Source of the DNA: Pecten maximus
Lineage: Eukaryota
Direction of reading: 5' to 3'
Assembly: GCF_902652985.1 (NCBI RefSeq)
Contig: NC_047017.1
Span: 45,818,001-45,882,000 of the forward strand
Length of the DNA: 64,000 bases
Positions 2,819-34,032 of this stretch are shown one piece after another. The notes beneath the pieces were generated by a model. It worked only from the letters and a program-made list of their open reading frames with translations. It had not been told where the DNA came from and ran no database searches. The translations under genes and the position numbers were made by a program. Each line of letters opens with the position of its first letter. Position 1 is the stretch's first letter.

Positions 2819-3364
2819 AATGCATACATACTAATTATCTACCCATTGATCATTGTATATGTAGATTTTGAAAATATATTCTTAGTTTATAAAGGCACTT
2901 CAAAATTCTGCATCGTCATTTTGAAGAAATTTAAGAATATAAGTTTACTAAATTTACATACATCATTTAATGGGATATTATATATCCAATGAATACATCA
3001 ACCCATTAGCATTAAATAGTCCTACAAAAAAAGGCTAATTCCCAAGGATTACCTCGGAGGTCAGACGCAGTTACGAGTAAGGTGACACTATCAGAACCAT
3101 CCAGTTTCAACTTTCTTGTCAATTTTCTTTGAAGATCATGCGAAGAATTGGTTATTTTTTAATTGAATTTTACTGCAATCGACAAAGTTGCAGTATCACT
3201 GACACCAATTAAAGTCACAATGACATGCTACCTCCTGTGTCATACCTCTCTGACTGTCACCGAGATTTATATAACCCTGCATAATTATATAGCGTTCTTC
3301 TGTTACAACTGTCAGAGGAAAGGCCTATGATACAGAGGAGGGACTGGGGTGTATGGATACATGT

Positions 3365-9914: not shown

Positions 9915-12900
9915 CCCCACTCAGTACCTGACTACATCCCCGCCCACTCCACTCCAGTACCTGACTACATCCCCGCCCCACTCCAGTACTTGACTACACC
10001 CCGCCCCACACCAGTACGTGACTACATCCCCCCCGCCCACTCCAGTACCTGACTACATCCCCACCCCACTCCAGTACATGACTACACCCTCCCCCCCATT
10101 CCAGTACCTGACTACATCCCCCCCCCACTCCAGTACCTGACTACATCCCCCCCCCCCCCCACTCCATTCCAGTACCTGACTACATCCCTCCCCCACTCCA
10201 GTACCTGACTACATCCCTCCCCCACTCCAGTACCTGACTACATCCCCCCCACTCCAGTACCTGACTACATCCCCGCCCCACTCCAGTACGTGACTACACC
10301 CCGCCCCACTCCAGTACGTGACTACATCCCCCCCCCACTCCAGTACCTGACTACACCCCGCCCCACTCCAGTACCTGACTACATCCCCCCCCCACTCCAG
10401 TACCTGACTACATCCCCCCCCATTCCAGTACCTGACTACACCCCGCCCCACTCCAGTACCTGACTACACCCTACCCCCCCCACTCCAGTACATGACTACA
10501 ACACCCCCCCCACTCCAGTACCTGACTACACCCCCCCACTCCAGTACCTGACTACATCCCCGCCCCACTCCAGTACGTGACTACACCCTCCCCCCCACTC
10601 CAGTACCTAACTACATCCCCGCCCCACTCCAGTACGTGACTACACCCCCACCCCACTCCAGTACGTGACTACACCCCCACCCCACTCCAGTACCTGACTA
10701 CATCCCCGCCCCACTCCAGTACCTGACTACATCCCCGCCCCACTCCAGTACCTGACTACACCCCCCCCCATTCCAGTACCTGACTACAACCCTCCCCCCC
10801 CCCCCCCCACTCCAGTACCTGACTACATCCCCACCCCACTCCAGTACCTGACTACATCCCACCCCACTCCAGTACCTGACTACATCCCCCCCCCCCCCCA
10901 CTCCAGTACCTGACTACATCCCCCCCACTCCAGTACCTGACTACACCCCCGCCCCACTCCAGTACCTGACTACATCCCCTACCCCCCACTCCAGTACCTG
11001 ACTACATCCCCTACCCCCCACTCCAGTACCTGACTACATCCCCTACCCCCCACTCCAGTACCTGACTACATCCCCCCCCCACTCCAGTACCTGACTACAT
11101 CCCCCCCCCACTCCAGTACCTGACTACATCCCCCCCCCCACTCCAGTACCTGACTACATCCCCCCCCACTCCAGTACCTGACTACATCCCCCCACTCCAG
11201 TACCTGACTACATCCCCCCCCACTCCAGTACCTGATAACATCCCCCCCCACTCCAGTACCTGATACATCCCCCCCCACTCCAGTACCTGACTACATCCCC
11301 CCCCACTCCAGTACCTGATAACATCCCCCCCACTCCAGTACCTGATAACATCCCCCCCACTCCAGTACCTGACTACATCCCCCCCCCCACTCCAGTACCT
11401 GACTACATCCCCCCCCACTCCAGTACCTGATAACATCCCCCCCCACTCCAGTACCTGACTACATCCCCCCCCACTCCAGTACCTGATAACATCCCCCCCC
11501 CCACTCCAGTACCTGACTACACCCCCCCCCCCACTCCAGTACCTGACTACATCCCCCCCCCCCATTCCAGTACCTGACTACAATCCCCCCCACATCCAGT
11601 ACCTGACTACACCCCCCCCCCACTCCAGTACCTGATAACATCCCCCCCACTCCAGTACCTGACTACATTCCCCCCCACTCCAGTACCTGACTACATCCCC
11701 CCCCCCACTCCAGTACCTGACTACATCCCCACCCCACTCTAGTACCTGACTACACCCCCCGCCCCACTCCAGTACCTGACTACACCCCCGCCCCACTCCA
11801 GTACCTGACTACATCCCCCCTCCCACTCCAGTACCTGACTACATCCCCGCCCACTCCAGTACCTGACTACATCCCCCCCCACTCCAGTACCTGACTACAT
11901 CCCCCCCCACTCCAGTACCTGACTACACCCCGCCCCAACTCCAGTACCTGACTACAACCCCCCCCCCCCACTCCAGTACGTGACTACATCCTCCCCCCCA
12001 CTCCAGTACCTGACTACATCCCACCCCACTCCAGTACCTGACTACACCCTCCCCCCACTCCAGTACCTGACTACCCACCCTCCCCCCCCACTCCAGTACC
12101 TGACTACATCCCCCCCACTCCAGTACCTGACTACATCACCGCCCACTCCAGTACCTGACTACATCCCCGCCCCACTCCAGTACCTGACTACATCCCCGCC
12201 CCACTCCAGTACCTGACTACATCCCCCCCACTCCAGTACCTGACTACATCCCCCCCCCACTCCAGTACCTGACTACATCCCCCCCCCACTCCAGTACCTG
12301 ACTACACCCTCCCCCCCACTCCAGTACCTGACTACATCCCCGCCCCACTCCAGTACCTGACTACATCCCCTACCCCCCCCAATCCACTACCTGACTACAC
12401 CCCGCCCCACTCCAGTACCTGACTACACCCTCCCCCCACTCCAGTACCTGACTACACCCCCCCCCCACTCCAGTACCTGACTTACACCCTCACCACTCCC
12501 AGTACCTGACTACATCCCCCCACTACAGTTACCTGACTTACACCCTCCCCCCCACTCCAGTACCTGACTACACCCCCCCACTCCAGTACCTGACTACCCC
12601 CCCCCATTCCAGTACCTGACTACAACCCCCCCCCCCCCCACTTCCAAGTTACCTGACCTACATCCCCACCCCACTCCGTACCTGACTACATCCCACCCCA
12701 CTCCCAGTACCTGACTTTACATCCCCCCCCCCCCACTCCAGTACCTGACTACATCCCACCCCACTCCAGTACCTGACTACAACCCCGCCCCCCACTCCAG
12801 TACCTGACTACATCCCCTACCCCCCACTCCAGTACCTGACTACATCCCCTACCCCCCCACTCCAGTACCTGACTACATCCCCTACCCCCCACACTCCAGT

Positions 12901-15900
12901 ACCTGACTACATCCCCCCCCCCACTCCAGTACCTGACTACATCCCCCCCCCACTCCAGTACCTGACTACATCCCCCCCCCCACTCCAGTACCTGACTACA
13001 TCCCCCCCCACTCCAGTACCTGACTACATCCCCCCACTCCAGTACCTGACTACATTCCCCCCCACTCCAGTACCTGATAACATCCCCCCCCACTCCAGTA
13101 CCTGATTAACATCCCCCCCCACTCCAGTACCTGACTACATCCCCCCCCACTCCAGTACCTGATAACATCCCCCCCACTCCAGTACCTGATAACATCCCCC
13201 CCACTCCAGTACCTGACTACATCCCCCCCCCCACTCCAGTACCTGACTACACCCCCCCCCACTCCAGTACCTGATAACATCCCCCCCCACTCCAGTACCT
13301 GACTACATCCCCCCCCACTCCAGTACCTGATAACATCCCCCCCCCCACTCCAGTACCTGACTACATCCCCCCCCCCACTCCAGTACCTGACTACATCCCC
13401 CCCCCACTCCAGTACCTGACTACATCCCCCCCCCCCCATTCCAGTACCTGACTACATCCCCGCCCACTCCAGTACCTGACTACATCCCCCCCCCACTCCA
13501 GTACCTGATAACATCCCCCCCACTCCAGTACCTGACTACATTCCCCCCCACTCCAGTACCTGACTACATCCCCTACCCCCCACTCCAGTACCTGACTACA
13601 TCCCCACCCCACTCTAGTACCTGACTACACCCCCGCCCAACTCCAGTACCTGACTACACCCCCGCCCCACTCCAGTACCTGACTACATCCCCCCCTCCCA
13701 CTCCAGTACCTGACTACATCCCCGCCCCCCCCTCCAGTACCCCTACCCCCCACATCCCCCCCCACTCCAGTACCTGACTACATCCCCCCCCCCCCCCCAG
13801 TACCTGACTACACCCCCGCCCAACTCCAGTACCTGACTACACCCCCCCCCCCCCCCCCCCCCCCCCTTCCAGTAACCTGACTACCAAAACCTCCCCCCCC
13901 CCTACCGACTACATCCCCCCACTCCAGTACCTGACTAACACTCCCACCCTCCCCCCACTCCAGTAACTCTTACTAACCCCTCCCACCCCACTCCAGTACC
14001 TGAACTACACCTCCCCCCCACTCCAGTACCTGACCTTACATCCACCCCCACCCCCAGTACCTGACTACATCCCGCCCCACTCCAGTACCTACATCCCCCC
14101 CCACTCCAGTACCTGAAATACATTTCCCCCCCCCACTCCCCGTAAACCGACTACATCCCCCCCCCCTCCATACCTACTACAATCCCCCCCCCACTCCAGT
14201 AACCTGAAATCACCCCCCCCCCATCCAGTACCTGACTACACCCCCGCCCCACTCCAGTACCTGACTACATCCCCCCCCCCCCCCCATCCACTACCTCCCC
14301 CCCCCCCCCCCCTCCAGTCCTACAACACCCCCCCATTCCGTACCTGACTACACCCCCTCCCCCCCCCCCCCCACTCCAGTACCTGACTACCTCCCCCCAC
14401 TCCAGTACCTGACTACATCCCCCCACTCCCGTACCTGACTACACCCCCCCCCCCCCCCCATCCATACCTGACTACATCCCCCCCCCCCCCCCCCTTCCAC
14501 CTGACTACAACCCCCCCCCCATCCAGTACCTGACTACATCCCCACCCCCACTCCTACCTGACTAACCATCCCCCCCCCCCCCCCTCCTACCTACTACAAC
14601 CCCCCCCCACTCCAGTACCCGACTACCCCCCCCCCCACTCCAGTACCTGACTACATCCCCCCCCCTCCAGTACCTGACTACATCCCCCCCCACTCCAGTA
14701 CCTGACTACATCCCCCCCCCACTCCAGTACCTGACTACATCCCCCCCACTCCAGTACCTGACTACATCCCCCCCACTCCAGTACCTGATAACATCCCCCC
14801 CCCACTCCAGTAACGATAACATACCCCCCCCCACTCCAGTACCTGACTACATCCCCCCCCACTCCAGTACCTGATAACATTACCCCCCACTCCAGTACCT
14901 GATAACATCCCCCCCACTCCAGTACCTGACTACATCCCCCCCCCACTCCAGTACCTGACTACATCCCCCCCACCTCCAGTACCTGATACATCCCCCCCCA
15001 CTCCAGGTACCTGACTACATCCCCCCCCCCACTCCAGTACCTGATAACATCCCCCCCCCCACTCCAGTACCTGACTACATCCCCCCCCCACTCCAGTACC
15101 TGACTACATCCCCCCCCACGTCCAAGTAAACTGACTACATCCCCCCCCCCATTCCAGTACCTGACTACAATCCCCCCGCCCACTTTATACCCTACTAACA
15201 TCCCCCCCCCAACTCCATACCTGATAACCATCCCCCCCCCACTCCAGTACCTGACTACATCCCCCCCCCCACTCCAGTACCTGACTACATCCCCCCCCCC
15301 ACTCCAGTACCTGACTACATCCCCCCCACTCCAGTACCTGACTACACCCCCCCCCCAACTCCAGTACCTGACTACAAAACACCCCCCCCCCCCCAGTACC
15401 TGACTACATCCCCCCCCCCCCCACTCCATACCTGAAATACACTTCCCCCCCCACTCCGTACCTGACTACATTCCCCCCCCTCCAGATACTACATCCCCCA
15501 CCCCCCCACTCCAGTACCTGACCCACACCCCCCCCAAATCCAGTTTCCTGACTTACCACCCACCCCCCCCCCCACTCCAGTACCTACTACAACCTCCCCC
15601 CCCACTCCATACCTGACTACATCCCCCCCACTCCAGTACCTGACTACACCCCCCCCCCCCCCCGTACCTGACTACATCCCCCCCACTCCAGTAGCCGTGA
15701 CTACATCCCCCCCCCACTCCAGTACGCTGACTACATCACCGCCCACATCCAGTACCCGTGGACTCACATCCCTACATCCCCCCCACTGCCCAGTACCTGA
15801 CTACATCCCCAGCCACCACTCTAGTACCTGACTACAATCCCCCGCCAACTCCAGGACCGGACTACATCCCCCGCCCCACTCCAGTACCCTGACTACAATC

Positions 15901-16237
15901 CTCCCCCCCACTCCATAACCTGACTACATAACCCAATCCCACCCCACCCAGTACCTGACTACAATCCCCGCCCACTCCAGTACCTGACTACCCTCGCCCC
16001 ACCCTCCCCCCCCAATCCAAGCTACCTGACTACATCCCCCCCCACTCCAGTACCTGAGCTACATCCCTCCCCCACTCCAGTACCTGACTACATCCCCCCC
16101 CCACTCCAGTACCTGACTACACCCTCCCCCACTCCAGTACCTGACTACATCCCCCCCACTCCAGTACCTGACTACAACCCCCCCCACTCCAGTACCTGAC
16201 TACAACTACAACCCCCCCCATTCCAGTACCTGACTAC

Positions 16238-16313
<76 letters not shown>

Positions 16314-23997: not shown

Positions 23998-24223
23998 GAG
24001 TACAAAAGGGAGGTAACTGCCATTGAGTATACAAGGGAGGTAACTGCCATTGAGTACACAAGGGAGGTAACTGCCATTGAGTACACAAGGGAGGTAACTG
24101 CCATTGAGTACACAAGGGAGGTAACTGCCATTGAGTACACAGGGGACCTAACTGCCATTGAGTATACAAGGGAGGTAACTGCCATTGAGTACACAAGGGA
24201 GGTAACTGCCATTGAGTACACAA
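23998..24223. repeat. 27-bp minisatellite, left part (split by transposon)
   Basis: Unit gggaggtaactgccattgagtacacaa. Confidence 0.95.
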
Positions 24224-24683
24224 GGCCTCAGACCACAATTAATTTCCCTCTTTGTTCTACCAAAGAAAAATCGAAATTAAAATATTTCAGAAGTTTGCAA
24301 AAAATCTGGCTTTCACATCACGTGTAGAACTATTCAAGCTGAACATACAGTGAGCTGGAAAGTACCTCATGACCGGCATTTAACAAAGTTATTTTTATTT
24401 AAGTGTAACCACCCTACTATATTGTAGGAAAATCCGGAAAATCACAAAATATTACTACTCAAGCCTTATAACTCCCCGTGTCCTGCCTCACAAACAAACA
24501 TGGAAATGGTGTCAAAATAAAATTCTGCCACTAGATTACATATTGCACTATAAATCTATGCTAAAATTATGTCCATATCTGTAGCAGCTAAGTCAGGAAA
24601 AAATATTTAGCAACAGTCCTGAAATTTCAATATGTACTACATTCGTGTACAACGACCCGGAAGTATTATTGTGGTCTGAGGCC
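24224..24683. repeat. Left long terminal direct repeat (460 bp, MITE-like, 16-bp TIRs)
   Basis: Starts ggcctcagaccacaattaatttcc and ends ggaagtattattgtggtctgaggcc. Confidence 0.95.
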
Positions 24684-26745
24684 TGTATATATGTCAAATG
24701 TTGAAAAATAAAATTTTCATTACGTACACAGTATTGTATGTTATTGATTAAGTTTAAAATCAAATTTGAAGTTATTCTGTTCAAAAATAAAAATTCTATG
24801 GTCATTTTACTACCCCTACCCCTGGCCAGGGGCCAATTTTCACTAACTGAGCAGGGTCACCATGCAAACATTCCTGTTTTGCACACAATGTTGATGGAAT
24901 AGTTGCAATGAATTTATGACAATAACACACATTCAGCAGACTAACTTGTGTCATATTTTTACTATGCTCTTGAAAAAAATAAAGATGTTATAACATGTTA
25001 ATTAAGAAAAACTTGAAAATTCAAGATTTAAAAAAGATTTTTGTATATATTAGTGAATAACTTTTTTATTAGATGTCTCAGCCTGTCTAACTTTTTGCAT
25101 TCTGAAAGACCAGTTTTTAAAGATAATATTTACATAGACACACTTGGGGGTCACTTAGTAGTAATCAGGTAATTAGTGGTCAAGTGGTCAAGGGTCCCCT
25201 GGGGGTACACTGTTCTGGAAGTCTACCTCAGAGTATTAAAGAGAGCATAACTTGTACTGGCACCAAGTAACGTGACTGAATTTTCATGTTAAGTAATTCT
25301 GGGAAGTTACACAACATCTCACCGTTTAAATTTTTGGCATAAATTCAAGTTTTCAATGATTTTTTTGAAAATTAAAATGGGATTTTACAATTTTTTAAGG
25401 AAAAATTTCATTTAAATGCTTAAAAAGTGAAGTTAAATTCATTTTTCTAAAATCATTACTTCAATTATATAAAGTGATACTAAAGCTGTACTCAAATATG
25501 CAAAGACAATTAATATATTTGCACAAGTATGGAAATTACAGTGAGTTTAATGTGCATAGGTATGCCTCATACTTGACTAATTTTCAGACCCAAATCTGGA
25601 GTGGCGTGACGGACAAACTTTGAACCTATTTAAACTCATAAATACTTTAAAACAAAGGTCACAATTGAACAAATTCCCTTTGTGACAGAGAAAATGTTTA
25701 ATTAGCAATTAAAGTTTCACAAGTCTGATGTAAAATTTCATTGTATATCTACATTATGTGTCCTTCTGAGAGACCATGTCCTTGGACAGGGCAAAATCCT
25801 ATCATCTGTTTTTGCATGAATACCAAATTTTCAATGATCTGTGTTTAAAATGCCAAAAAACATATTTAAACCATTCGCTTACATAGAACGAAGGAAATAA
25901 TAAAGGAAAAACCTGTTCTGAGAAAAATGTGTTGAAATATTGTGAATTAGAATGTATACACTATATCACATTGAGTGAAATTCAAATATTTGGGAGGGGG
26001 GAACAATATTGTGTTGTTTTCTTTCAAATTTTGAATTAAAATTAATTTAAACCACTACAGTACATCACAAGATACATACATTACACTTTATGCCCAGCTT
26101 ATAACAACAGCACCTGCTTTGTTGCATGTAGAAAAGATTTTTGACAGAAAATGTGAAATTTTAGAAGATTTTGTGATTAATTCAAATAATAATCATGATT
26201 TTTTAATCACAATTTTACAAAATAATCTACATTTGCTATGTGGCCAGTCATTTAACATGTCAGCACACTATGTACTATTGGAAAATATAGCCCCGGACTT
26301 TGTACAGTACATGTAAATAGTGAAATGAGCAAAACTGCGGTTAACAGTATTACGGTTTTTACCCTAAAAGTTATACCAAAATATAGCGCAAAACCGTTTA
26401 TCTTCATAAACAGTGCTAGTACACATCTGAAACTTTAAAGTCACCTCAAAGCGTATACTAGAAATGTGTAGCAAACACAAATACCAACATGTTTTCTCGA
26501 CAAACATGTCCAGTGTGATCAGAGACAAGGATCCGCAATAGAAACGATCATCGAAACGAGGTGTATTGGGGGTGTAGTTACTAAAATGAAGCTGTCATTA
26601 ATTAAAAACTCACAGAAAGTACGTGAAATGTCATCTGCATATAGGTAAAATACACACAACTGCACAGGAAATGTTAAAAGTTCGCGATGTTTCTAATTTA
26701 AGGTCCACGCGCGAATGTTTACATCGGAAAGGTGCGTTCTATGCA

Positions 26746-27205
26746 GGCCTCAGACCACAATTAATTTCCCTCTTTGTTCTACCAAAGAAAAATCGAAATT
26801 AAAATATTTCAGAAGTTTGCAAAAAATCTGGCTTTCACATCACGTGTAGAACTATTCAAGCTGAACATACAGTGAGCTGGAAAGTACCTCATGACCGGCA
26901 TTTAACAAAGTTATTTTTATTTAAGTGTAACCACCCTACTATATTGTAGGAAAATCCGGAAAATCACAAAATATTACTACTCAAGCCTTATAACTCCCCG
27001 TGTCCTGCCTCACAAACAAACATGGAAATGGTGTCAAAATAAAATTCTGCCACTAGATTACATATTGCACTATAAATCTATGCTAAAATTATGTCCATAT
27101 CTGTAGCAGCTAAGTCAGGAAAAAATATTTAGCAACAGTCCTGAAATTTCAATATGTACTACATTCGTGTACAACGACCCGGAAGTATTATTGTGGTCTG
27201 AGGCC
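26746..27205. repeat. Right long terminal direct repeat (460 bp)
   Basis: Same length as 24224-24683 and, by eye, identical in sequence. Confidence 0.95.
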
Positions 27206-27550
27206 ACAAGGGAGGTGACTGCCATTGAGTACACAGGGGACCTAACTGCCATTGAGTATACAAGGGAGGTAACTGCCATTGAGTACACAAGGGAGGTAAC
27301 TGCCATTGAGTACACAAGGGAAGTAACTGCCATTGAGTACACATGGGAGGTAACTGCCATTGAGTACACAAGGGAGGTAACTGCCATTGAGTACACATTG
27401 GAGGTAACTGCCATTGAGTACACATGGGAGGTAAATGTCATTGAGTACACATGGGAGGTAACTGCCATTGAGTATACAAGGGAGGTAACTGCCATTGAAA
27501 ACACAAGGGAGGTAACTGCCATTGAGTACACTTTGGAGGTAACTGCCATT
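27206..27550. repeat. 27-bp minisatellite, right part
   Basis: The array gggaggtaactgccattgagtacacaa resumes in register after the acaa duplication. Confidence 0.95.
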
Positions 27551-27947: not shown

Positions 27948-30900
27948 GTATACCAAGGTTTGTATGTCGTATCAGTAACTATATATAGGTGTGTATGTCA
28001 TATCAGTAACTATATATACCAAGGTTTGTATGTCGTATCAGTAACTATATATAGGTGTGTATGTCGTATCAGTAACTATATATAGGTGTGTATGTCGTAT
28101 CAGTAACTATATATACCAAGGTTTGTATGTCGTATCAGTAACTATATATACCAAGGTTTGTATGTCATATCAGTAACTATATATACCAAGGTTTGTATGT
28201 CGTATCAGTAACTATATATAGGTGTGTATGTCGTATCAGTAACTATATATAGGTGTGTATGTCGTATCAGTAACTATATATACCAAGGTTTGTATGTCGT
28301 ATCAGTAACTATATATAGGTGTGTATGTCCGTATTCAGTACTATATATACCAAGGTTTGTATGTCGTATCAGTAACTATATACCTAGGTGTGTATGTCGT
28401 ATCAGTACTATATATACAGGTTTGTATGTCGTATCAGTAACTATATATACCAAGGTTTGTATGTCGTATCAGTAACTATATATACCAAGGTGTGTATGTC
28501 GTATCAGTACTATATATACCAAGGTTTGTATGTCGTATCAGTAACTATATATACCAAGGTTTGTATGTCGTATCAGTAACTATATATACCAAGGTGTGTA
28601 TGTCGTATCAGTAACTATATATAGGTTTGTATGTCGTATCAGTAACTATATATACCAAGGTTTGTATGTCGTATCAGTAACTATATATACCAAGGTGTGT
28701 ATGTCGTATCAGTAACTATATATACCAAGGTTTGTATGTCGTATCAGTAACTATATATACCAAGGTTTGTATGTCGTATCAGTAACTATATAATAGGTGT
28801 GTATGTCGGTATCAGTAACTATATATAGGTGTGTATGTCGTATCAGTAACTATATATACCAAGGTTTGTATGTCGTATCAGTACTATATATACCAGTTTG
28901 TATGTCGTATCAGTAACTATATATACCAAGGGTTGTATGTCGTATCAGTAACTATGATATACCAAGGTTTGTATGTCGTTATCAGTAACTATATATAGGT
29001 GTGTATGTCCGTATCAGTAACTATATACCAAGGTTTGTATGTCGTATCAGTAAACTATATATAAGGTGTGTATGTCGTATCAGTAACTATATATAGGTTT
29101 GTATGTCGTATCAGTAACTATATATACCAAGGTTTGTATGTCGTACCAGTTACTATATAAAGGTGTGTATGTCGTATCAGTAACTATATATACCAAGGTT
29201 TGTATGTCGTATCAGTAACTATATATAGGTGTGTATGTCGTATCAGTAACTATATATAGGTTTGTATGTCGTATCAGTAACTATATATACCAAGGTTTGT
29301 ATGTCGTATCAGTAACTATATATACCAAGGTTTGTATGTCGTATCAGTAACTATATATAGGTGTGTATGTCGTATCAGTAACTATATATACCAAGGTTTG
29401 TATGTCGTATCAGTAACTATATATACCAAGGTTTGTATGTCGTATCAGTAACTATATATACCAAGGTTTGTATGTCGTATCAGTAACTATATATACCAAG
29501 GTTTGTATGTCGTATCAGTAACTATATATACCAAGGTTGTATGTCGTATCAGTAACTATATATACCAAGGTTTGTATGTCGTATCAGTAACTATATATAC
29601 CAAGGTCTGTATGTCGTATCAGTAACTATATATACCAAGGTTTGTATGTCGTATCAGTAACTATATATAGGTGTGTATGTCGTATCAGTAACTATATATA
29701 CCAAGGTCTGTATGTCGTATCAGTAACTATATATAGGTGTGTATGTCGTATCAGTAACTATATATACCAAGGTTTGTATGTCGTATCAGTAACTATATAT
29801 AGGTTTGTATGTCGTATCAGTAACTATATATAGGTGTGTATGTCGTATCAGTAACTATATATACCAAGGTTTGTATGTCGTATCAGTAACTATATATAGG
29901 TTTGTATGTCGTATCAGTAACTATATATACCAAGGTTTGTATGTCGTATCAGTAACTATATATAGGTGTGTATGTCGTATCAGTAACTATATATAGGTGT
30001 GTATGTCGTATCAGTAACTATATATACCAAGGTTTGTATGTCGTATCAGTAACTATATATACCAAGGTTTGTATGTCGTATCAGTAACTATATATACCAA
30101 GGTTTGTATGTCGTATCAGTAACTATATATAGGTGTGTATGTCGTATCAGTAACTATATATACCAAGGTTTGTATGTCGTATCAGTAACTATATATAGGT
30201 GTGTATGTCGTACCAGTTACTATATATAGGTTTGTATGTCGTATCAGTAACTATATATACCAAGGTTTGTATGTCGTATCAGTAACTATATATACCAAGG
30301 TTTGTATGTCGTATCAGTAACTATATATTATTCGTACAGGTAACTATATAGGTGTGTATGTCGTATCAGTAACTATATATACCAAGGTGTGTATGTCGTA
30401 TCAGTAACTATATATAGGTTTGTATGTCGTATCAGTAACTATATATACCAAGGTTTGTATGTCGTATCAGTAACTATATATACCAAGGTTTGTATGTCGT
30501 ATCAGTAACTATATATAGGTGTGTATGTCGTATCAGTAACTATATATAGGTGTGTATGTCGTATCAGTAACTATATATACCAAGGTTTGTATGTCGTATC
30601 AGTTACTATATAAAGGTTGTATGTCGTATCAGTAACTATATATAGGTGTGTATGTCGTATCAGTAACTATATATAGGTGTGTATGTCGTATCAGTAACTA
30701 TATATACCAAGGTTTGTATGTCGTATCAGTAACTATATATAGGTTTGTATGTCGTATCAGTAACTATATATAGGTGTGTATGTCGTATCAGTAACTATAT
30801 ATACCAAGGTTTGTATGTCGTATCAGTAACTATATATACCAAGGTTTGTATGTCGTATCAGTTACTATATATAGGTGTGTATGTCGTATCAGTAACTATA

Positions 30901-32024
30901 TATACCAAGGTTTGTATGTCGTATCAGTAACTATATATACCAAGGTTTGTATGTCGTATCAGTAACTATATATAGGTTTGTATGTCGTATCAGTAACTAT
31001 ATATACCAAGGTTTGTATGTCGTATCAGTAACTATATATACCAAGGTTTGTATGTCGTATCAGTAACTATATATACCAAGGTTTGTATGTCGTATCAGTA
31101 ACTATATATACCAAGGTGTGTATGTCGTATCAGTAACTATATATACCAAGGTTTGTATGTCGTATCAGTAACTATATATACCAAGGTGTGTATGTCGTAT
31201 CAGTAACTATATATACCAAGGTGTGTATGTCGTATCAGTAACTATATATACCAAGGTGTGTATGTCGTATCAGTAACTATATAGACGCAAGGTCTGTATG
31301 TCGTATCAGTAAATATATATACCAAGGTTGTATGTCGTATCAGTAACTATATATACCAAGGTTTGTATGTCGTATCAGTAACTATATATAGGTGTGTATG
31401 TCGTATCAGTAACTATATATACCAAGGTGTGTATGTCGTATCAGTAACTATATATACCAAGGTTTGTATGTCGTATCAGTAACTATATATACCAAGGTTT
31501 GTATGTCGTATCAGTAACTATATATACCAAGGTTTGTATGTCGTATCAGTAACTATATATAGGTTTGTATGTCGTATCAGTAACTATATATACCAAGGTT
31601 TGTATGTCGTATCAGTAACTATATATAGTTTGTATGTCGTATCAGTAACTATATATAGGTGTGTATGTCGTATCAGTAACTATATATAGGTTTGTATGTC
31701 GTATCAGTAACTATATATAGGTGTGTATGTCGTATCAGTAACTATATATAGGTGTGTATGTCGTATCAGTAACTATATATACCAAGGTTTGTATGTCGTA
31801 TCAGTAACTATATATACCAAGGTTTGTATGTCGTATCAGTAACTATATATAGGTGTGTATGTCGTATCAGTAACTATATATACCAAGGTTTGTATGTCGT
31901 ATCAGTAACTATATATACCAAGGTTTGTATGTCGTATCAGTAACTATATATACCAAGGTTTGTATGTCGTATCAGTAACTATATATACCAAGGTTTGTAT
32001 GTCGTATCAGTAACTATATATACC
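27948..32024. repeat. Minisatellite, 35/31-bp units, ~4.1 kb
   Basis: Unit ccaaggtttgtatgtcgtatcagtaactatatata; the variant lacks ccaa. Confidence 0.97.
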
Positions 32025-34032
32025 ACGTTTTATTACTGCTATAAGTATTAGTTACCCTATGTTTTATTAATGTTGTAAGAGTTATAGAGATGAGGTTTGG
32101 TGTTATTGGTTTGCAATACCGCTACCAATTTATGCAGCTAAATAAAGGAAATCTTCATTCATCAGATACTAAAAAGGATCAAATCAACATGATTTTTTCC
32201 TTTTTAAATTCAAATTTAATGACCATTCTTCACAGCTTCACAAATATATTTAACTTTTATACAGTAGGTATTAACATCTGATACTTCCACAAACAACAAT
32301 TATATAAAAATAATCTCGGGTGTCAAATTAATACAGAAAACCCCATTACAGAGCATGGGTCCCTCAGAAACTTGTACAAAATTAATATAACTAGAGTATG
32401 GTAATCCAAACCTATCAGCTGATAATTAATAGTAAGTCCACACTTCAAAGTTCATGTTTTTTTAATATCCAAGTAATGATAAAAATTATCTAATTAGCGT
32501 AAACCATAAAGAGTTATAATTATTGGGAAGTCGCTACTTAAAAAAATTGATACACAGTTTAGTTATGAATACATGAGAGTTATAAAATCTGGGGTTGACA
32601 TTTAGAAAACCATGTGGCTCTCATTAAGTCAATATTATCTGTTAGCTGTATGGGAGGAAGTGACGGCAGACAAAATGGATGTAAACTATGTGACATTTTA
32701 TCATATCACATAAGTGGCTCCCTCTATCCTCCCCTAGTGTTACCACCGTTATAATGGAGGATAATTATATCTGTCTATAGCTGAGTTGACATTTCAGCGA
32801 ATGACCAATATTTTCTGATCATTAAATCTAATCAATCACTACTGGAACACAATAGCTCTGAAGCCTCCATAGTTCTTCACCTTCGACCCTGTACAACCAG
32901 TGTTCATTACAATATTTGACAAATTAACAGAAAGTATTTTTTTCCATATGCAGGAACTGTCATTAAACTCATCTCTTTCCTCAATTCAAGATTTATAGAT
33001 ATTTCCTTTCACCGAGTACTTTAAATCCACACAAATCATACATGTTGTCACATTTATAGAAAATTACTTCTATAGTTACTTCATCATTGAAATTACATCA
33101 TTATTATTTAACATTAGACCAAATCAAATCTCTAGATTCAGTAGATAAAATATCACACAGCCTTCGCATTATCAATGAACTGGGACAGAATGTTGTTGTC
33201 AAATTGAGTCATTAAGGTGCACATGCTAGATGGAAATATTTGGCCAAAATTTAATTAGACATGTAATGATCAATTTACCTTCATGTACATTCTTTACCTT
33301 AAAATAAGAGTGATTAAGTAGGACACTTTATAGAATCTGAATTTGTATTAATGTGTAATTCACTGGTAATATAGACCATAATTACTTTGTACTATGACAG
33401 GCAAATATGTATTTAAATGTAGGTAATGATATTTGAATTTCTCAATTTGGACAGTATCAAGATGTTAGTGATTATCCAGAAACATCTAATGTATAAATGC
33501 CATGAACTCTACTAAACACATATATAGGTGACAATTTGAAAAAAAATTATCAGTGACATTTGTCTGTATGGTCCAGGGAGGTCAGGCAATAAAAGTCAGA
33601 AGTCAATTGTTCAAGTGAACCTATTATAAATAAAACTGTCCCCCTTAGTATGATGTATAGGGACTTGGTATTGTCAGTGTAATGACAGATTTATACTATA
33701 TTCTGGGTCAGGGTATTCCAATTTATGAATTTTGTGTAGAATTTTAAGGAATACATTTGTATTTACAGAAGTATTGGATCAAGGTACAATATTTCAACTC
33801 CAATAACTGCATAGTAAATTACTAAAGATTTATTACGAACTTGATGACAATCTAGTTACTGAACAGTAGGATACATACTGAGATAGAAAACCTTTGGTAG
33901 AATTGTTTAGGAGAGCCTTAATTGACTGGTAAGGTTGTTGGTAACAATGGAGAATAATGGAACCAGTTGGTACTATTAGGACTTGGAAGTATATAAGAAG
34001 ATAACACTGATCTACTTCTGTAGTTGATTGCT

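What the first reader, a model, noticed from the sequence alone, without database searches (positions are those of the whole stretch)
24224..27205. Bacterial-style composite transposon in an animal genome: two identical MITE-like 460-bp repeats moved a 2-kb interior as one unit
Seen: two 460-bp direct repeats, each with its own 16-bp TIRs (ggcctcagaccacaat), flank 2,062 bp of unique DNA. Only the outer ends share a target duplication (acaa). Excising 24224-27209 rebuilds the 27-bp unit gagtacacaa-gggagg exactly, so the whole block inserted in one event. The termini are GG...CC, not TG...CA, and no PBS or PPT is evident, so it is not an LTR retroelement. Knowledge (from memory): KolobokP elements, common in bivalves, have long terminal direct repeats of about 450 or 660 bp with short TIRs, and encode a DDE transposase plus a His-Me finger nuclease. 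Inference: this is a very young non-autonomous member. Its target ACAA departs from the canonical Kolobok TTAA.
Basis: partly seen in the sequence, partly recalled or inferred. Interest (0 to 1): 0.85.

Follow-up and report, generated by a model that had tools for sequence, protein, structure and literature searches.

The report
Young non-autonomous KolobokP transposon in scallop
This is a very recent insertion of a non-coding member of KolobokP, a DNA transposon lineage with paired 460-bp direct-repeat ends that was described in bivalves in 2022, so the architecture is real but known; its relatives in this genome land far more often than chance next to one minisatellite motif.

Summary
Window 24224-24683 and 26746-27205 are 460-bp direct repeats, 100% identical. 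Each has a perfect 16-bp TIR (GGCCTCAGACCACAAT). They flank 2,062 bp. ACAA lies on both outer sides, and excision restores the phase of a 27-bp minisatellite.

The element meets the structural criteria of KolobokP (Kojima and Bao 2022, PMC9587614): LTDR-INT-LTDR, an LTDR of about 450 bp with its own TIRs, GG..CC termini and a 4-bp TSD. The family also shows solo LTDRs, (LTDR-INT)n multimers and INT-INT junctions with a 4-bp microdeletion.

The genome is Pecten maximus xPecMax1.1, because tool hits fall exactly on that paper's coordinates. The LTDR shares its 5' TIR and its length with the autonomous KolobokP-1_PeMa, and the interior shares its tips. The LTDR is diverged from that family's, and the interior has no ORF with a Pfam match. 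That paper lists no non-autonomous Pecten family, so this is a new member of a known kind.

ACAA is not a departure, since KolobokP TSDs are 4 bp and not TTAA. The interior is not unique DNA.

One side result may be new. This lineage, autonomous copies included, inserts about 37-fold more often than chance within 30 nt of a GGGRRNTAAC minisatellite core.

Neither the empty allele nor the outer junctions at this locus could be checked with reads.

The parts
23998..24223 (.). Left part of the target 27-bp minisatellite. The unit is GAGTACACAAGGGAGGTAACTGCCATT and contains the GGGRRNTAAC core.
   Evidence: TRF finds period 27, 8.4 copies and 94% matches. Units are printed in register.
24220..24223 (.). 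Left copy of the 4-bp target-site duplication ACAA.
   Evidence: Sequence. Excision restores the minisatellite unit.
24224..24683 (+). Left long terminal direct repeat (LTDR), 460 bp, termini GG...CC.
   Evidence: 100% identical to 26746-27205. Many 100%-identical copies occur genome-wide.
24224..24239 (+). 5' TIR of the left LTDR (GGCCTCAGACCACAAT). This is the outer end presumably used in transposition.
   Evidence: Perfect 16-bp inverted repeat. The same 16-mer lies at the 5' ends of published KolobokP-1_PeMa LTDRs (against coordinates).
24668..24683 (-). 3' TIR of the left LTDR (inner end).
24684..26745 (+). Internal region (INT), 2,062 bp, AT-rich and non-coding. It starts TGTATATATGT and ends CTATGCA, like the INT of KolobokP-1_PeMa.
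   Evidence: No ORF longer than 70 aa lies wholly inside the element, and there is no Pfam match at E<0.05. There is no Rfam match. At least 45 scored genomic copies. Tips compared with the published consensus.
26746..27205 (+). Right LTDR, 460 bp.
27190..27205 (-). 3' TIR of the right LTDR (outer end).
27206..27209 (.). Right copy of the TSD ACAA.
27206..27550 (.). Right part of the target 27-bp minisatellite.
   Evidence: TRF finds period 27 and 12.8 copies.

Best explanation
Window 24224-27205 is one monomer (LTDR-INT-LTDR, 2,982 bp) of a non-autonomous KolobokP DNA transposon family of the great scallop Pecten maximus. It is related to the autonomous family KolobokP-1_PeMa. Inferred mechanism: a KolobokP DDD/E transposase supplied in trans, most plausibly by one of the nearly identical KolobokP-1_PeMa copies, binds the TIRs at the two outermost ends. 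It moves the whole unit and integrates it across a 4-bp staggered cut, which gave the ACAA duplication inside a 27-bp minisatellite. Because each LTDR has both TIRs, an LTDR can also move or be excised alone. Because the LTDRs are direct repeats, unequal crossover builds (LTDR-INT)n arrays and solo LTDRs. Shown here: the anatomy, the TSDs, the copy structures, the shared TIR and the lack of an ORF with a Pfam match. Inferred: which transposase acts, the cut-and-paste or copy-out chemistry, and current activity.
For: Anatomy:
- 460-bp identical LTDRs, 16-bp TIRs, GG..CC termini, ACAA TSD, and excision that restores the array.

Family behaviour in the same genome:
- Seven other dispersed monomers were read with their flanks. 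Three have perfect 4-bp TSDs (ATCT, ATAT, ATAA).
- Two solo LTDRs have TSDs ATAT and AACT.
- (LTDR-INT)n arrays with period 2,522 bp fill unplaced contigs C184, C1669, C3466, C1742, C1814 and C2638.
- An LTDR-(INT)3-LTDR lies on C19.
- INT-INT junctions lack 4 bp from either tip. They read TCTATGCATATATG in L061 and TCTATGTATATATG in L062 and L063. This is what Kojima and Bao report for LTDR excision.

Link to the autonomous family:
- PF05551 (His-Me) hits at C2:51978057, C10:1190088 and C17:5980663 lie inside the paper's KolobokP-1_PeMa coordinates on LR736839, LR736847 and LR736854. They are on the strand opposite the element, as the paper describes.
- The exact 16-nt TIR sits at the 5' ends of those LTDRs.
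- The published 460-bp LTDR consensus has the same first 28 nt, a 34-nt identical block and the same 3' subterminal block. Its INT starts tgtatatatgt and ends ctatgca.

Non-autonomy and youth:
- No ORF longer than 70 aa lies wholly inside the element, and Pfam and Rfam find nothing.
- There are 0 differences between the two LTDRs. The C8 copy has 100% identical LTDRs and a 99.95% identical INT.

Independent data:
- Contigs from four public runs of four studies bridge the LTDR/INT junctions in both directions (table 8, records 12, 15, 18, 23).
Against: - The full-length identity between this LTDR and the KolobokP-1_PeMa LTDR was judged by eye from the paper's machine-read text, not computed, because no more genome letters could be fetched. 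It must be below about 90%, since the paper's copy list for that LTDR goes down to 90.6% identity and none of the 100%-identical copies found appears in the part of it that was read.
- Apart from its tips, the INT shows only weak resemblance to the autonomous INT, so its origin is open.
- Four of the eight monomers read lack a clean 4-bp TSD.
- The outer junctions and zygosity at this particular locus could not be confirmed from reads.
Confidence: 0.93

Rival explanations
1. Opportunistic composite transposon. Two independent insertions of a 460-bp MITE happened to flank unrelated host DNA, and the outer ends were then used once to move the block.
For: Each repeat is a complete MITE-like unit with both TIRs, and solo copies have their own 4-bp TSDs. 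The inner flanks TGCA and TGTA differ by one base, like a decayed TSD.
Against: The interior never appears as single-copy host DNA. It is a repeat whose scored copies all adjoin an LTDR or another interior. The same interior tips, TGTATATATGT...CTATGCA, flank the LTDRs of the autonomous KolobokP-1_PeMa, so the arrangement is inherited from a lineage-wide architecture reported for 228 families in 7 phyla.
Confidence: 0.03
2. The 2,062-bp interior is the unit of a macrosatellite into which a MITE inserted once. The 2,522-bp unit then amplified in tandem, and monomers are pieces of that array.
For: Interior-to-interior tandems without the repeat exist on C19, C3210 and C3006.
Against: There are two different interior-interior junctions. 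One keeps TGCA and the other keeps TGTA. Each lacks 4 bp relative to the two tips joined, which fits independent excisions rather than one ancestral empty site. The C19 tandem is itself bounded by LTDRs. Dispersed monomers have target duplications.
Confidence: 0.02
3. A non-autonomous LTR retrotransposon (TRIM-like) with 460-bp LTRs.
For: Direct terminal repeats, a 4-bp TSD, solo repeats and tandem arrays sharing repeats are also seen in TRIMs (discussed).
Against: The termini are GG..CC with a 16-bp TIR, not TG..CA. The interior starts TGTATATATG, with no TGG primer-binding site, and ends without a polypurine tract. LTDR loss with a 4-bp footprint is a DNA-transposon behaviour. The related autonomous element carries a His-Me nuclease hit and, according to the paper, a DDD/E transposase.
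Confidence: 0.01
4. Assembly artefact: the second repeat or the whole insertion at this locus was created by mis-assembly of a high-copy repeat within a minisatellite.
For: The flanks are minisatellites. No public contig bridges 24223/24224 or 27205/27206, and the family is high-copy.
Against: The two flanks are the same 27-bp array in phase with a clean 4-bp duplication, which a mis-join would not produce. The identical monomer structure recurs at other loci with their own TSDs.
Confidence: 0.01

Closest known systems
KolobokP-1_PeMa (autonomous KolobokP of Pecten maximus; Kojima and Bao 2022, PMC9587614)
   Same: Same genome. LTDR of exactly 460 bp, identical 16-nt 5' TIR (first 28 nt identical to the published consensus), 4-bp TSD, the same interior tips (TGTATATATGT...CTATGCA) and the same GG..CC termini.
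   Different: That family is 4,529 bp with a 3,609-bp interior encoding a transposase and a His-Me nuclease. This element is 2,982 bp with a 2,062-bp interior that has no ORF with a Pfam match. The LTDR bodies are visibly diverged (estimated 80-90% by eye, not computed). Its 3' TIR differs from the 5' one, whereas here both are perfect. The paper counts 17 LTDR copies, whereas this family numbers in the hundreds.
Non-autonomous KolobokP families such as KolobokP-4N1_CorFlu, KolobokP-N1_CGi and KolobokP-N4_PatPel
   Same: Monomers of 2.6-3.1 kb with LTDRs of 455-473 bp, 4-bp TSDs, many solo LTDRs, multimers, and INT-INT junctions with small deletions.
   Different: Different species and sequences. 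The paper's Table S1 lists no non-autonomous family for Pecten maximus.
Bacterial composite transposons (Tn5 or Tn10 type) and IS26 pseudo-compound transposons
   Same: Two copies of a self-contained mobile unit in direct orientation bracket an interior, and the outer ends move the whole.
   Different: Here the flanking units encode nothing. In autonomous relatives the transposase lies in the interior. The architecture is a stable inherited trait of a eukaryotic lineage rather than a chance assembly.
Canonical Kolobok superfamily
   Same: RR..YY termini, and a DDD/E transposase in the autonomous relatives according to the paper.
   Different: Canonical Kolobok makes TTAA-specific TSDs. This element and its relatives use varied 4-bp targets: ACAA, ATCT, ATAT, ATAA and AACT.

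Membership tests
KolobokP | LTDR-INT-LTDR architecture with long terminal direct repeats | tested here: met
   Two 460-bp repeats, 100% identical, flank 2,062 bp.
KolobokP | LTDR length near 450 bp or near 660 bp | tested here: met
   The LTDR is 460 bp. Table S1 gives 460 bp for KolobokP-1_PeMa.
KolobokP | Each LTDR carries its own short TIRs (11-18 bp in the text, up to 25 in Table S1) | tested here: met
   Perfect 16-bp TIR on each LTDR.
KolobokP | Termini 5'-RR ... YY-3' | tested here: met
   GG...CC.
KolobokP | TSD of 3-5 bp, usually 4, without TTAA specificity | tested here: met
   ACAA here. ATCT, ATAT and ATAA at three other monomers, and ATAT and AACT at two solo LTDRs. Four monomers are irregular.
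KolobokP | Solo LTDRs, (LTDR-INT)n-LTDR multimers, and LTDR-(INT)n-LTDR with a 3-4-bp microdeletion at INT-INT junctions | tested here: met
   Solo LTDRs in L018 and L027. Multimers in C184, C1669, C3466 and others. INT-INT junctions lack 4 bp from either tip.
KolobokP | [quoted passage not shown] | tested here: met
   The exact 16-nt TIR lies at the 5' ends of LTDRs at the published KolobokP-1_PeMa coordinates, and PF05551 hits lie inside those copies. The published consensus shares the first 28 nt, internal blocks and INT tips. Caveat: full-length identity was not computed, and the transposase itself was not examined here.
KolobokP | Own coding capacity (needed only for autonomous members) | tested here: not met
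   No ORF longer than 70 aa lies wholly inside the element, and there is no Pfam match. It is therefore a non-autonomous member.
Canonical Kolobok | TTAA-specific 4-bp TSD | tested here: not met
   The TSD is ACAA, and the other copies vary.
LTR retrotransposon / TRIM | TG..CA LTR termini, a primer-binding site after the 5' LTR and a polypurine tract before the 3' LTR | tested here: not met
   By inspection: termini are GG..CC, the interior starts TGTATATATG and ends GTGCGTTCTATGCA. No formal search for tRNA complementarity was run.
Bacterial-type opportunistic composite transposon | Flanking units encode the transposase, and the interior is unrelated passenger DNA captured by chance | tested here: not met
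   The LTDR contains no ORF of 50 aa or more of its own. The interior is a family-specific repeat with tips conserved in the autonomous relative.

The most novel reading that the evidence does not exclude
The KolobokP-1_PeMa lineage, meaning the autonomous copies and this non-autonomous family, is not target-neutral as published for KolobokP. It integrates preferentially inside minisatellites built around a GGGRRNTAAC(TCT) core, typically 14-20 nt downstream of TAAC. A near-copy of that core (GGGGTATAACTCT) lies about 12 nt from the inner LTDR in the autonomous element's own interior. This suggests that an element-encoded DNA-binding activity (transposase or His-Me nuclease) recognises the motif and tethers integration. 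Evidence: 25 exact TIR ends at 19 loci have the core within 30 nt outside, against 0.68 expected. Three of these loci are published KolobokP-1_PeMa copies. Caveats: the motif was defined after seeing six flanks. A few of the hits may be interior ends rather than targets. No other TE family was tested as a control.
Probability: 0.55. Interest if true: 0.5.

Novelty: new member of a known kind. Interest (0 to 1): 0.3.

Why it matters
The element is a clean, very young example of the composite-like KolobokP architecture, in a genome where only two autonomous families were catalogued. It adds a high-copy, apparently still mobile non-autonomous partner, which is useful for annotating the scallop genome and as a natural substrate for testing how KolobokP moves. 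The locus and its relatives also give footprints that bear on the open question of the mechanism. LTDR excisions remove 4 bp from either interior tip, and some new insertions carry 1-4 bp of interior tip with them. If the motif-linked insertion bias holds, it would be the first reported target preference in this lineage and a handle on what the element's proteins bind.

Tried and rejected
1. My own first idea was that the interior is an old macrosatellite unit and the repeat a MITE that landed in it, prompted by the interior-only tandems on C19. I rejected it after reading the junctions. There are two junction types, each missing 4 bp, and the array is bounded by LTDRs.

No computed alignment to the autonomous element and no look at its transposase were therefore possible.

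3. Public reads gave only short Logan contigs. They bridge the LTDR/INT junctions but not the outer junctions at this locus, and they show no joint for an empty site. Zygosity, polymorphism and assembly correctness at this locus stay untested.

4. Pfam scans of all ORFs of 50 aa or more lying within the element, and an Rfam scan, found nothing.

5. A coordinate-only test of the motif association on the first 10 Mb of C1 had too few LTDRs to be informative.

6. Earlier notes of this scan held nothing on KolobokP or on the minisatellite motif, apart from a note on the same interior. A paper search on Pecten minisatellites gave nothing relevant.
Full report
**1. The observation**

Window 24224-24683 and 26746-27205 are 460-bp direct repeats without a single mismatch. 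The identity extends by only one base on the left and none on the right. Each repeat begins and ends with a perfect 16-bp inverted repeat, GGCCTCAGACCACAAT. The termini are therefore GG...CC.

Between the repeats lie 2,062 bp (24684-26745). ACAA flanks the outer ends, at 24220-24223 and 27206-27209. The inner junctions read TGCA|repeat and repeat|TGTA.

The block interrupts a 27-bp minisatellite at 23998-24223 and 27206-27550. Deleting 24224-27209 rejoins the array in phase. The description is correct in every measurable respect.

**2. What the rest of the genome shows**

The window is G000:C3:45818001-45882000 of a 918.3-Mb assembly in 3,983 contigs.

- The repeat had 640 first-look candidates. 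All 40 that were scored were about 100% identical.
- The interior had 383 candidates, and 45 scored matches at 96-100% identity.
- The exact 16-nt TIR occurs 392 times, against 0 for the reversed control.

Mapping both parts onto the fetched loci gave four kinds of structure.

- **Dispersed monomers.** These have the same repeat-interior-repeat structure, on C8, C5 (three read, and two more by coordinates), C16 and C17 (two).
- **Solo repeats.** L018 and L027.
- **Arrays.** (Repeat-interior)n arrays with period 2,522 bp fill unplaced contigs C184, C1669, C3466, C1742, C1814 and C2638.
- **Interior tandems.** These occur on C19 (repeat-(interior)3-truncated repeat-interior...), C3210 and C3006.

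Flanks show perfect 4-bp duplications at four monomers (ACAA, ATCT, ATAT, ATAA) and at both solo repeats (ATAT, AACT).

Interior-interior junctions come in two forms: TCTATGCATATATG on C19, and TCTATGTATATATG on C3210 and C3006. Each lacks 4 bp relative to the two tips joined.

**3. Identification**

Kojima and Bao 2022 (PMC9587614) describe KolobokP as follows.

- An internal region between long terminal direct repeats (LTDRs) of about 450 or 660 bp.
- LTDRs with their own 11-18-bp TIRs.
- RR..YY termini.
- TSDs of 3-5 bp.
- Frequent solo LTDRs and (LTDR-INT)n-LTDR multimers.
- LTDR-(INT)n-LTDR forms in which 3-4 bp are 'almost always' missing at the INT-INT junction, 'at either tip'. The authors attribute this to LTDR excision.

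Every one of these features is present here.

Their Table S1 lists two families for Pecten maximus xPecMax1.1. KolobokP-1_PeMa is 4,529 bp, with a 460-bp LTDR, a 4-bp TSD and an 18-bp TIR. KolobokP-2_PeMa is the other. No non-autonomous family is listed for this species.

**4. The genome and the autonomous relative**

PF05551 (His-Me endonuclease zinc loop) hits lie at C2:51978057-51978194(+), C10:1190088-1190225(+) and C17:5980663-5980800(-). These fall inside the paper's KolobokP-1_PeMa copies at LR736839.1:51977104-51981632(c), LR736847.1:1189135-1193662(c) and LR736854.1:5977226-5981753(d). They are on the strand opposite the element, as the paper states.

The exact TIR 16-mer of the window's repeat lies at C2:51977548-51977563 and C2:51981617-51981632, and at C3:33922021, C4:29295316 and C1:25835521. 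These are the 5' ends of LTDRs in the paper's list. The assembly is therefore xPecMax1.1, and the two families share the 5' TIR in the genome itself.

The published LTDR consensus (machine-read text) matches the window's repeat in these ways.

- The first 28 nt are the same.
- A 34-nt block, cagtgagctggaaagtacctcatgaccggcattt, is identical.
- The 3' subterminal block, atgtactacattcgtgtacaacg, is the same.
- The length is the same, 460 bp.

The published interior starts tgtatatatgt and ends ctatgca, as here.

The bodies are clearly diverged. I estimate 80-90% identity by eye, and the divergence must exceed about 10%. The paper's copy list for that LTDR goes down to 90.6% identity, and none of the 100%-identical copies found appears in the part of it that I read.

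**5. Non-autonomy and age**

No ORF longer than 70 aa lies wholly inside the element. None matches Pfam at E<0.05, and Rfam finds nothing.

The two LTDRs are identical. The C8 monomer has identical LTDRs and a 99.95% identical interior. The insertion and the family's last activity are therefore very recent. This is an inference, and no rate was applied.

Contigs from four public runs of four studies contain the LTDR/INT junctions in both directions. The contig depth of the element is about two orders of magnitude above that of the unique flank. That fits a copy number of the order of 100, though the tool warns that depth is not a copy number.

No contig bridges the outer junctions or an empty site at this locus, because the flanks are minisatellite. 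Polymorphism and assembly correctness at this locus remain untested. The in-phase array and the clean TSD argue against a mis-join.

**6. Mechanism**

Shown: the anatomy and the population of structures.

Inferred:
- A KolobokP DDD/E transposase acts in trans on the two outermost TIRs and integrates the unit across a 4-bp stagger.
- The same enzyme can act on the two TIRs of one LTDR, which gives LTDR excision with a 4-bp footprint.
- Unequal crossover between LTDRs builds multimers and solo LTDRs.

Kojima and Bao further propose circular LTDR-INT intermediates and nuclease-induced unequal crossover. Nothing here tests these proposals.

The most plausible transposase source is KolobokP-1_PeMa, which has five full copies at 99.7-99.9% identity to their consensus in the paper's list. 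A 4,546-bp element at C3:5470358-5474903 has this family's TIRs and is another candidate. I could not read it.

**7. Irregular copies**

Four of the eight monomers read lack a clean 4-bp TSD.

- **L033:** TATT against TAAT.
- **L032:** a possible 3-bp TGT duplication, or a carried TGTA.
- **L055:** AGGT duplicated, with an extra A next to the left LTDR.
- **L059 (C5:47506032-47509017):** no duplication. It has TGCA on the left and TGTA on the right, which are exactly the interior tips. Neighbouring minisatellite units read GACC(C/T)ACTGACAG without those bases.

These look like 1-4 bp of donor interior carried along when a monomer leaves a multimer. That would be the counterpart of the 4-bp loss at INT-INT junctions. 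This reading is an inference from few cases.

**8. A side result: insertion bias**

Six of the eight monomers read sit in minisatellites with different unit lengths (24-52 bp). All six arrays share a core close to AAGGGRRNTAACT.

Genome-wide counts of the core:
- The 13-mer occurs 16,891 times against 606 for the reversed control.
- The 10-mer GGGRRNTAAC occurs 51,220 times against 16,718.
- At most 0.39% of the genome lies within 30 nt of a core.

Association with element ends:
- 12 TIR ends have the core pointing towards them within 30 nt, and 13 have it pointing away. Controls gave 0.
- That is 25 ends at 19 loci with distinct flanks, against 0.68 expected even if all 392 TIRs were outer ends. 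The Poisson probability is about 2e-30.
- Leaving out the four loci that suggested the motif, 18 ends at 15 loci remain.
- Three of the 19 loci are published KolobokP-1_PeMa copies (C3:33922021, C9:31470042, C10:1193647). The bias therefore belongs to the lineage.

Position relative to the core:
- In the 'towards' orientation, 9 of 12 gaps are 14-20 nt.
- Only 1 of the 25 gaps is below 14 nt. These windows were chosen after the fact.

The interior of the autonomous element ends ...GGGGTATAACTCTAGCCTATGCA|LTDR (and a loose end). This is a near-copy of the core, about 12 nt from the inner LTDR.

Kojima and Bao state that KolobokP shows no strong target specificity or preference. If the bias holds up, it would be new.

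Caveats: a few hits, such as C3:33922021 and C10:10270975, which end in ATGCA, may be interior ends rather than targets. No unrelated TE was tested as a control.

**9. Verdict**

The element is a new, uncatalogued member of a known kind, not a new kind of element. ACAA is normal for KolobokP. Interest is modest, and the insertion bias is the part worth following.

Noticed in passing
window 1-64000: About 45% of the window outside the element is made of roughly 17 different minisatellite arrays with units of 15-52 bp. Examples are 9915-16274 (29-bp unit, about 215 copies) and 27949-32025 (35-bp unit). Only the array that holds the insertion has the GGGRRNTAAC core: 17 of the window's 18 core matches lie in it.
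   Followed up: partly
whole genome; ends listed (e.g. G000:C8:30268344, C17:4410570, C10:16350987, C9:31470042, C10:1193647): Outer ends of this KolobokP lineage lie within 30 nt of a GGGRRNTAAC core at 25 ends (19 loci), against 0.68 expected. Published autonomous KolobokP-1_PeMa copies are among them. The core 13-mer is itself 28-fold over-represented in the genome.
   Followed up: partly
L055:1041-4022 (G000:C16:6540064-6543045): Another monomer of the family splits an exon encoding a Macro domain. The left flank matches Pfam PF01661 positions 1-65 at E=5.5e-18, and the right flank matches positions 68-106. The same flank-to-element junction appears as a loose end in public run X15, so this insertion is present in another data set.
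   Followed up: partly
L059/L065 (G000:C5:47506032-47509017): This monomer has no target duplication. It carries the interior tips TGCA (left) and TGTA (right) as extra bases compared with neighbouring minisatellite units, and it has an extra TGTA after the left LTDR. This suggests that donor-flank bases are carried along when a unit leaves a multimer.
   Followed up: partly
G000:C3:5470358-5474903: Three exact TIR hits outline a 4,546-bp element with this family's TIRs. That is close to the 4,529 bp of KolobokP-1_PeMa, but it is not in the paper's list. It is a possible autonomous partner with this LTDR type. It shows no PF05551 hit at E<=0.001. The sequence could not be fetched.
   Followed up: no
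G000:C844:3209-17982: PF05551 (His-Me nuclease) hits recur about every 3,660 bp (at 3209, 6868, 10537, 14195 and 17863). This looks like a multimer array of another nuclease-bearing KolobokP-like element. In all, 35 PF05551 matches were found in the genome.
   Followed up: no
L061 (G000:C19:8569080-8577000): The structure here is LTDR-(INT)3-LTDR(first 254 bp only)-INT..., at about 98% identity to the window copy. It is an older, rearranged multimer showing both LTDR loss and an internal LTDR truncation.
   Followed up: partly
public runs: A run labelled with a second organism (coded B) holds about half of the sampled words of the stretch, so the family or a close relative probably occurs in another species. 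Two invertebrate-metagenome and two marine-metagenome runs also hold part of it.
   Followed up: no
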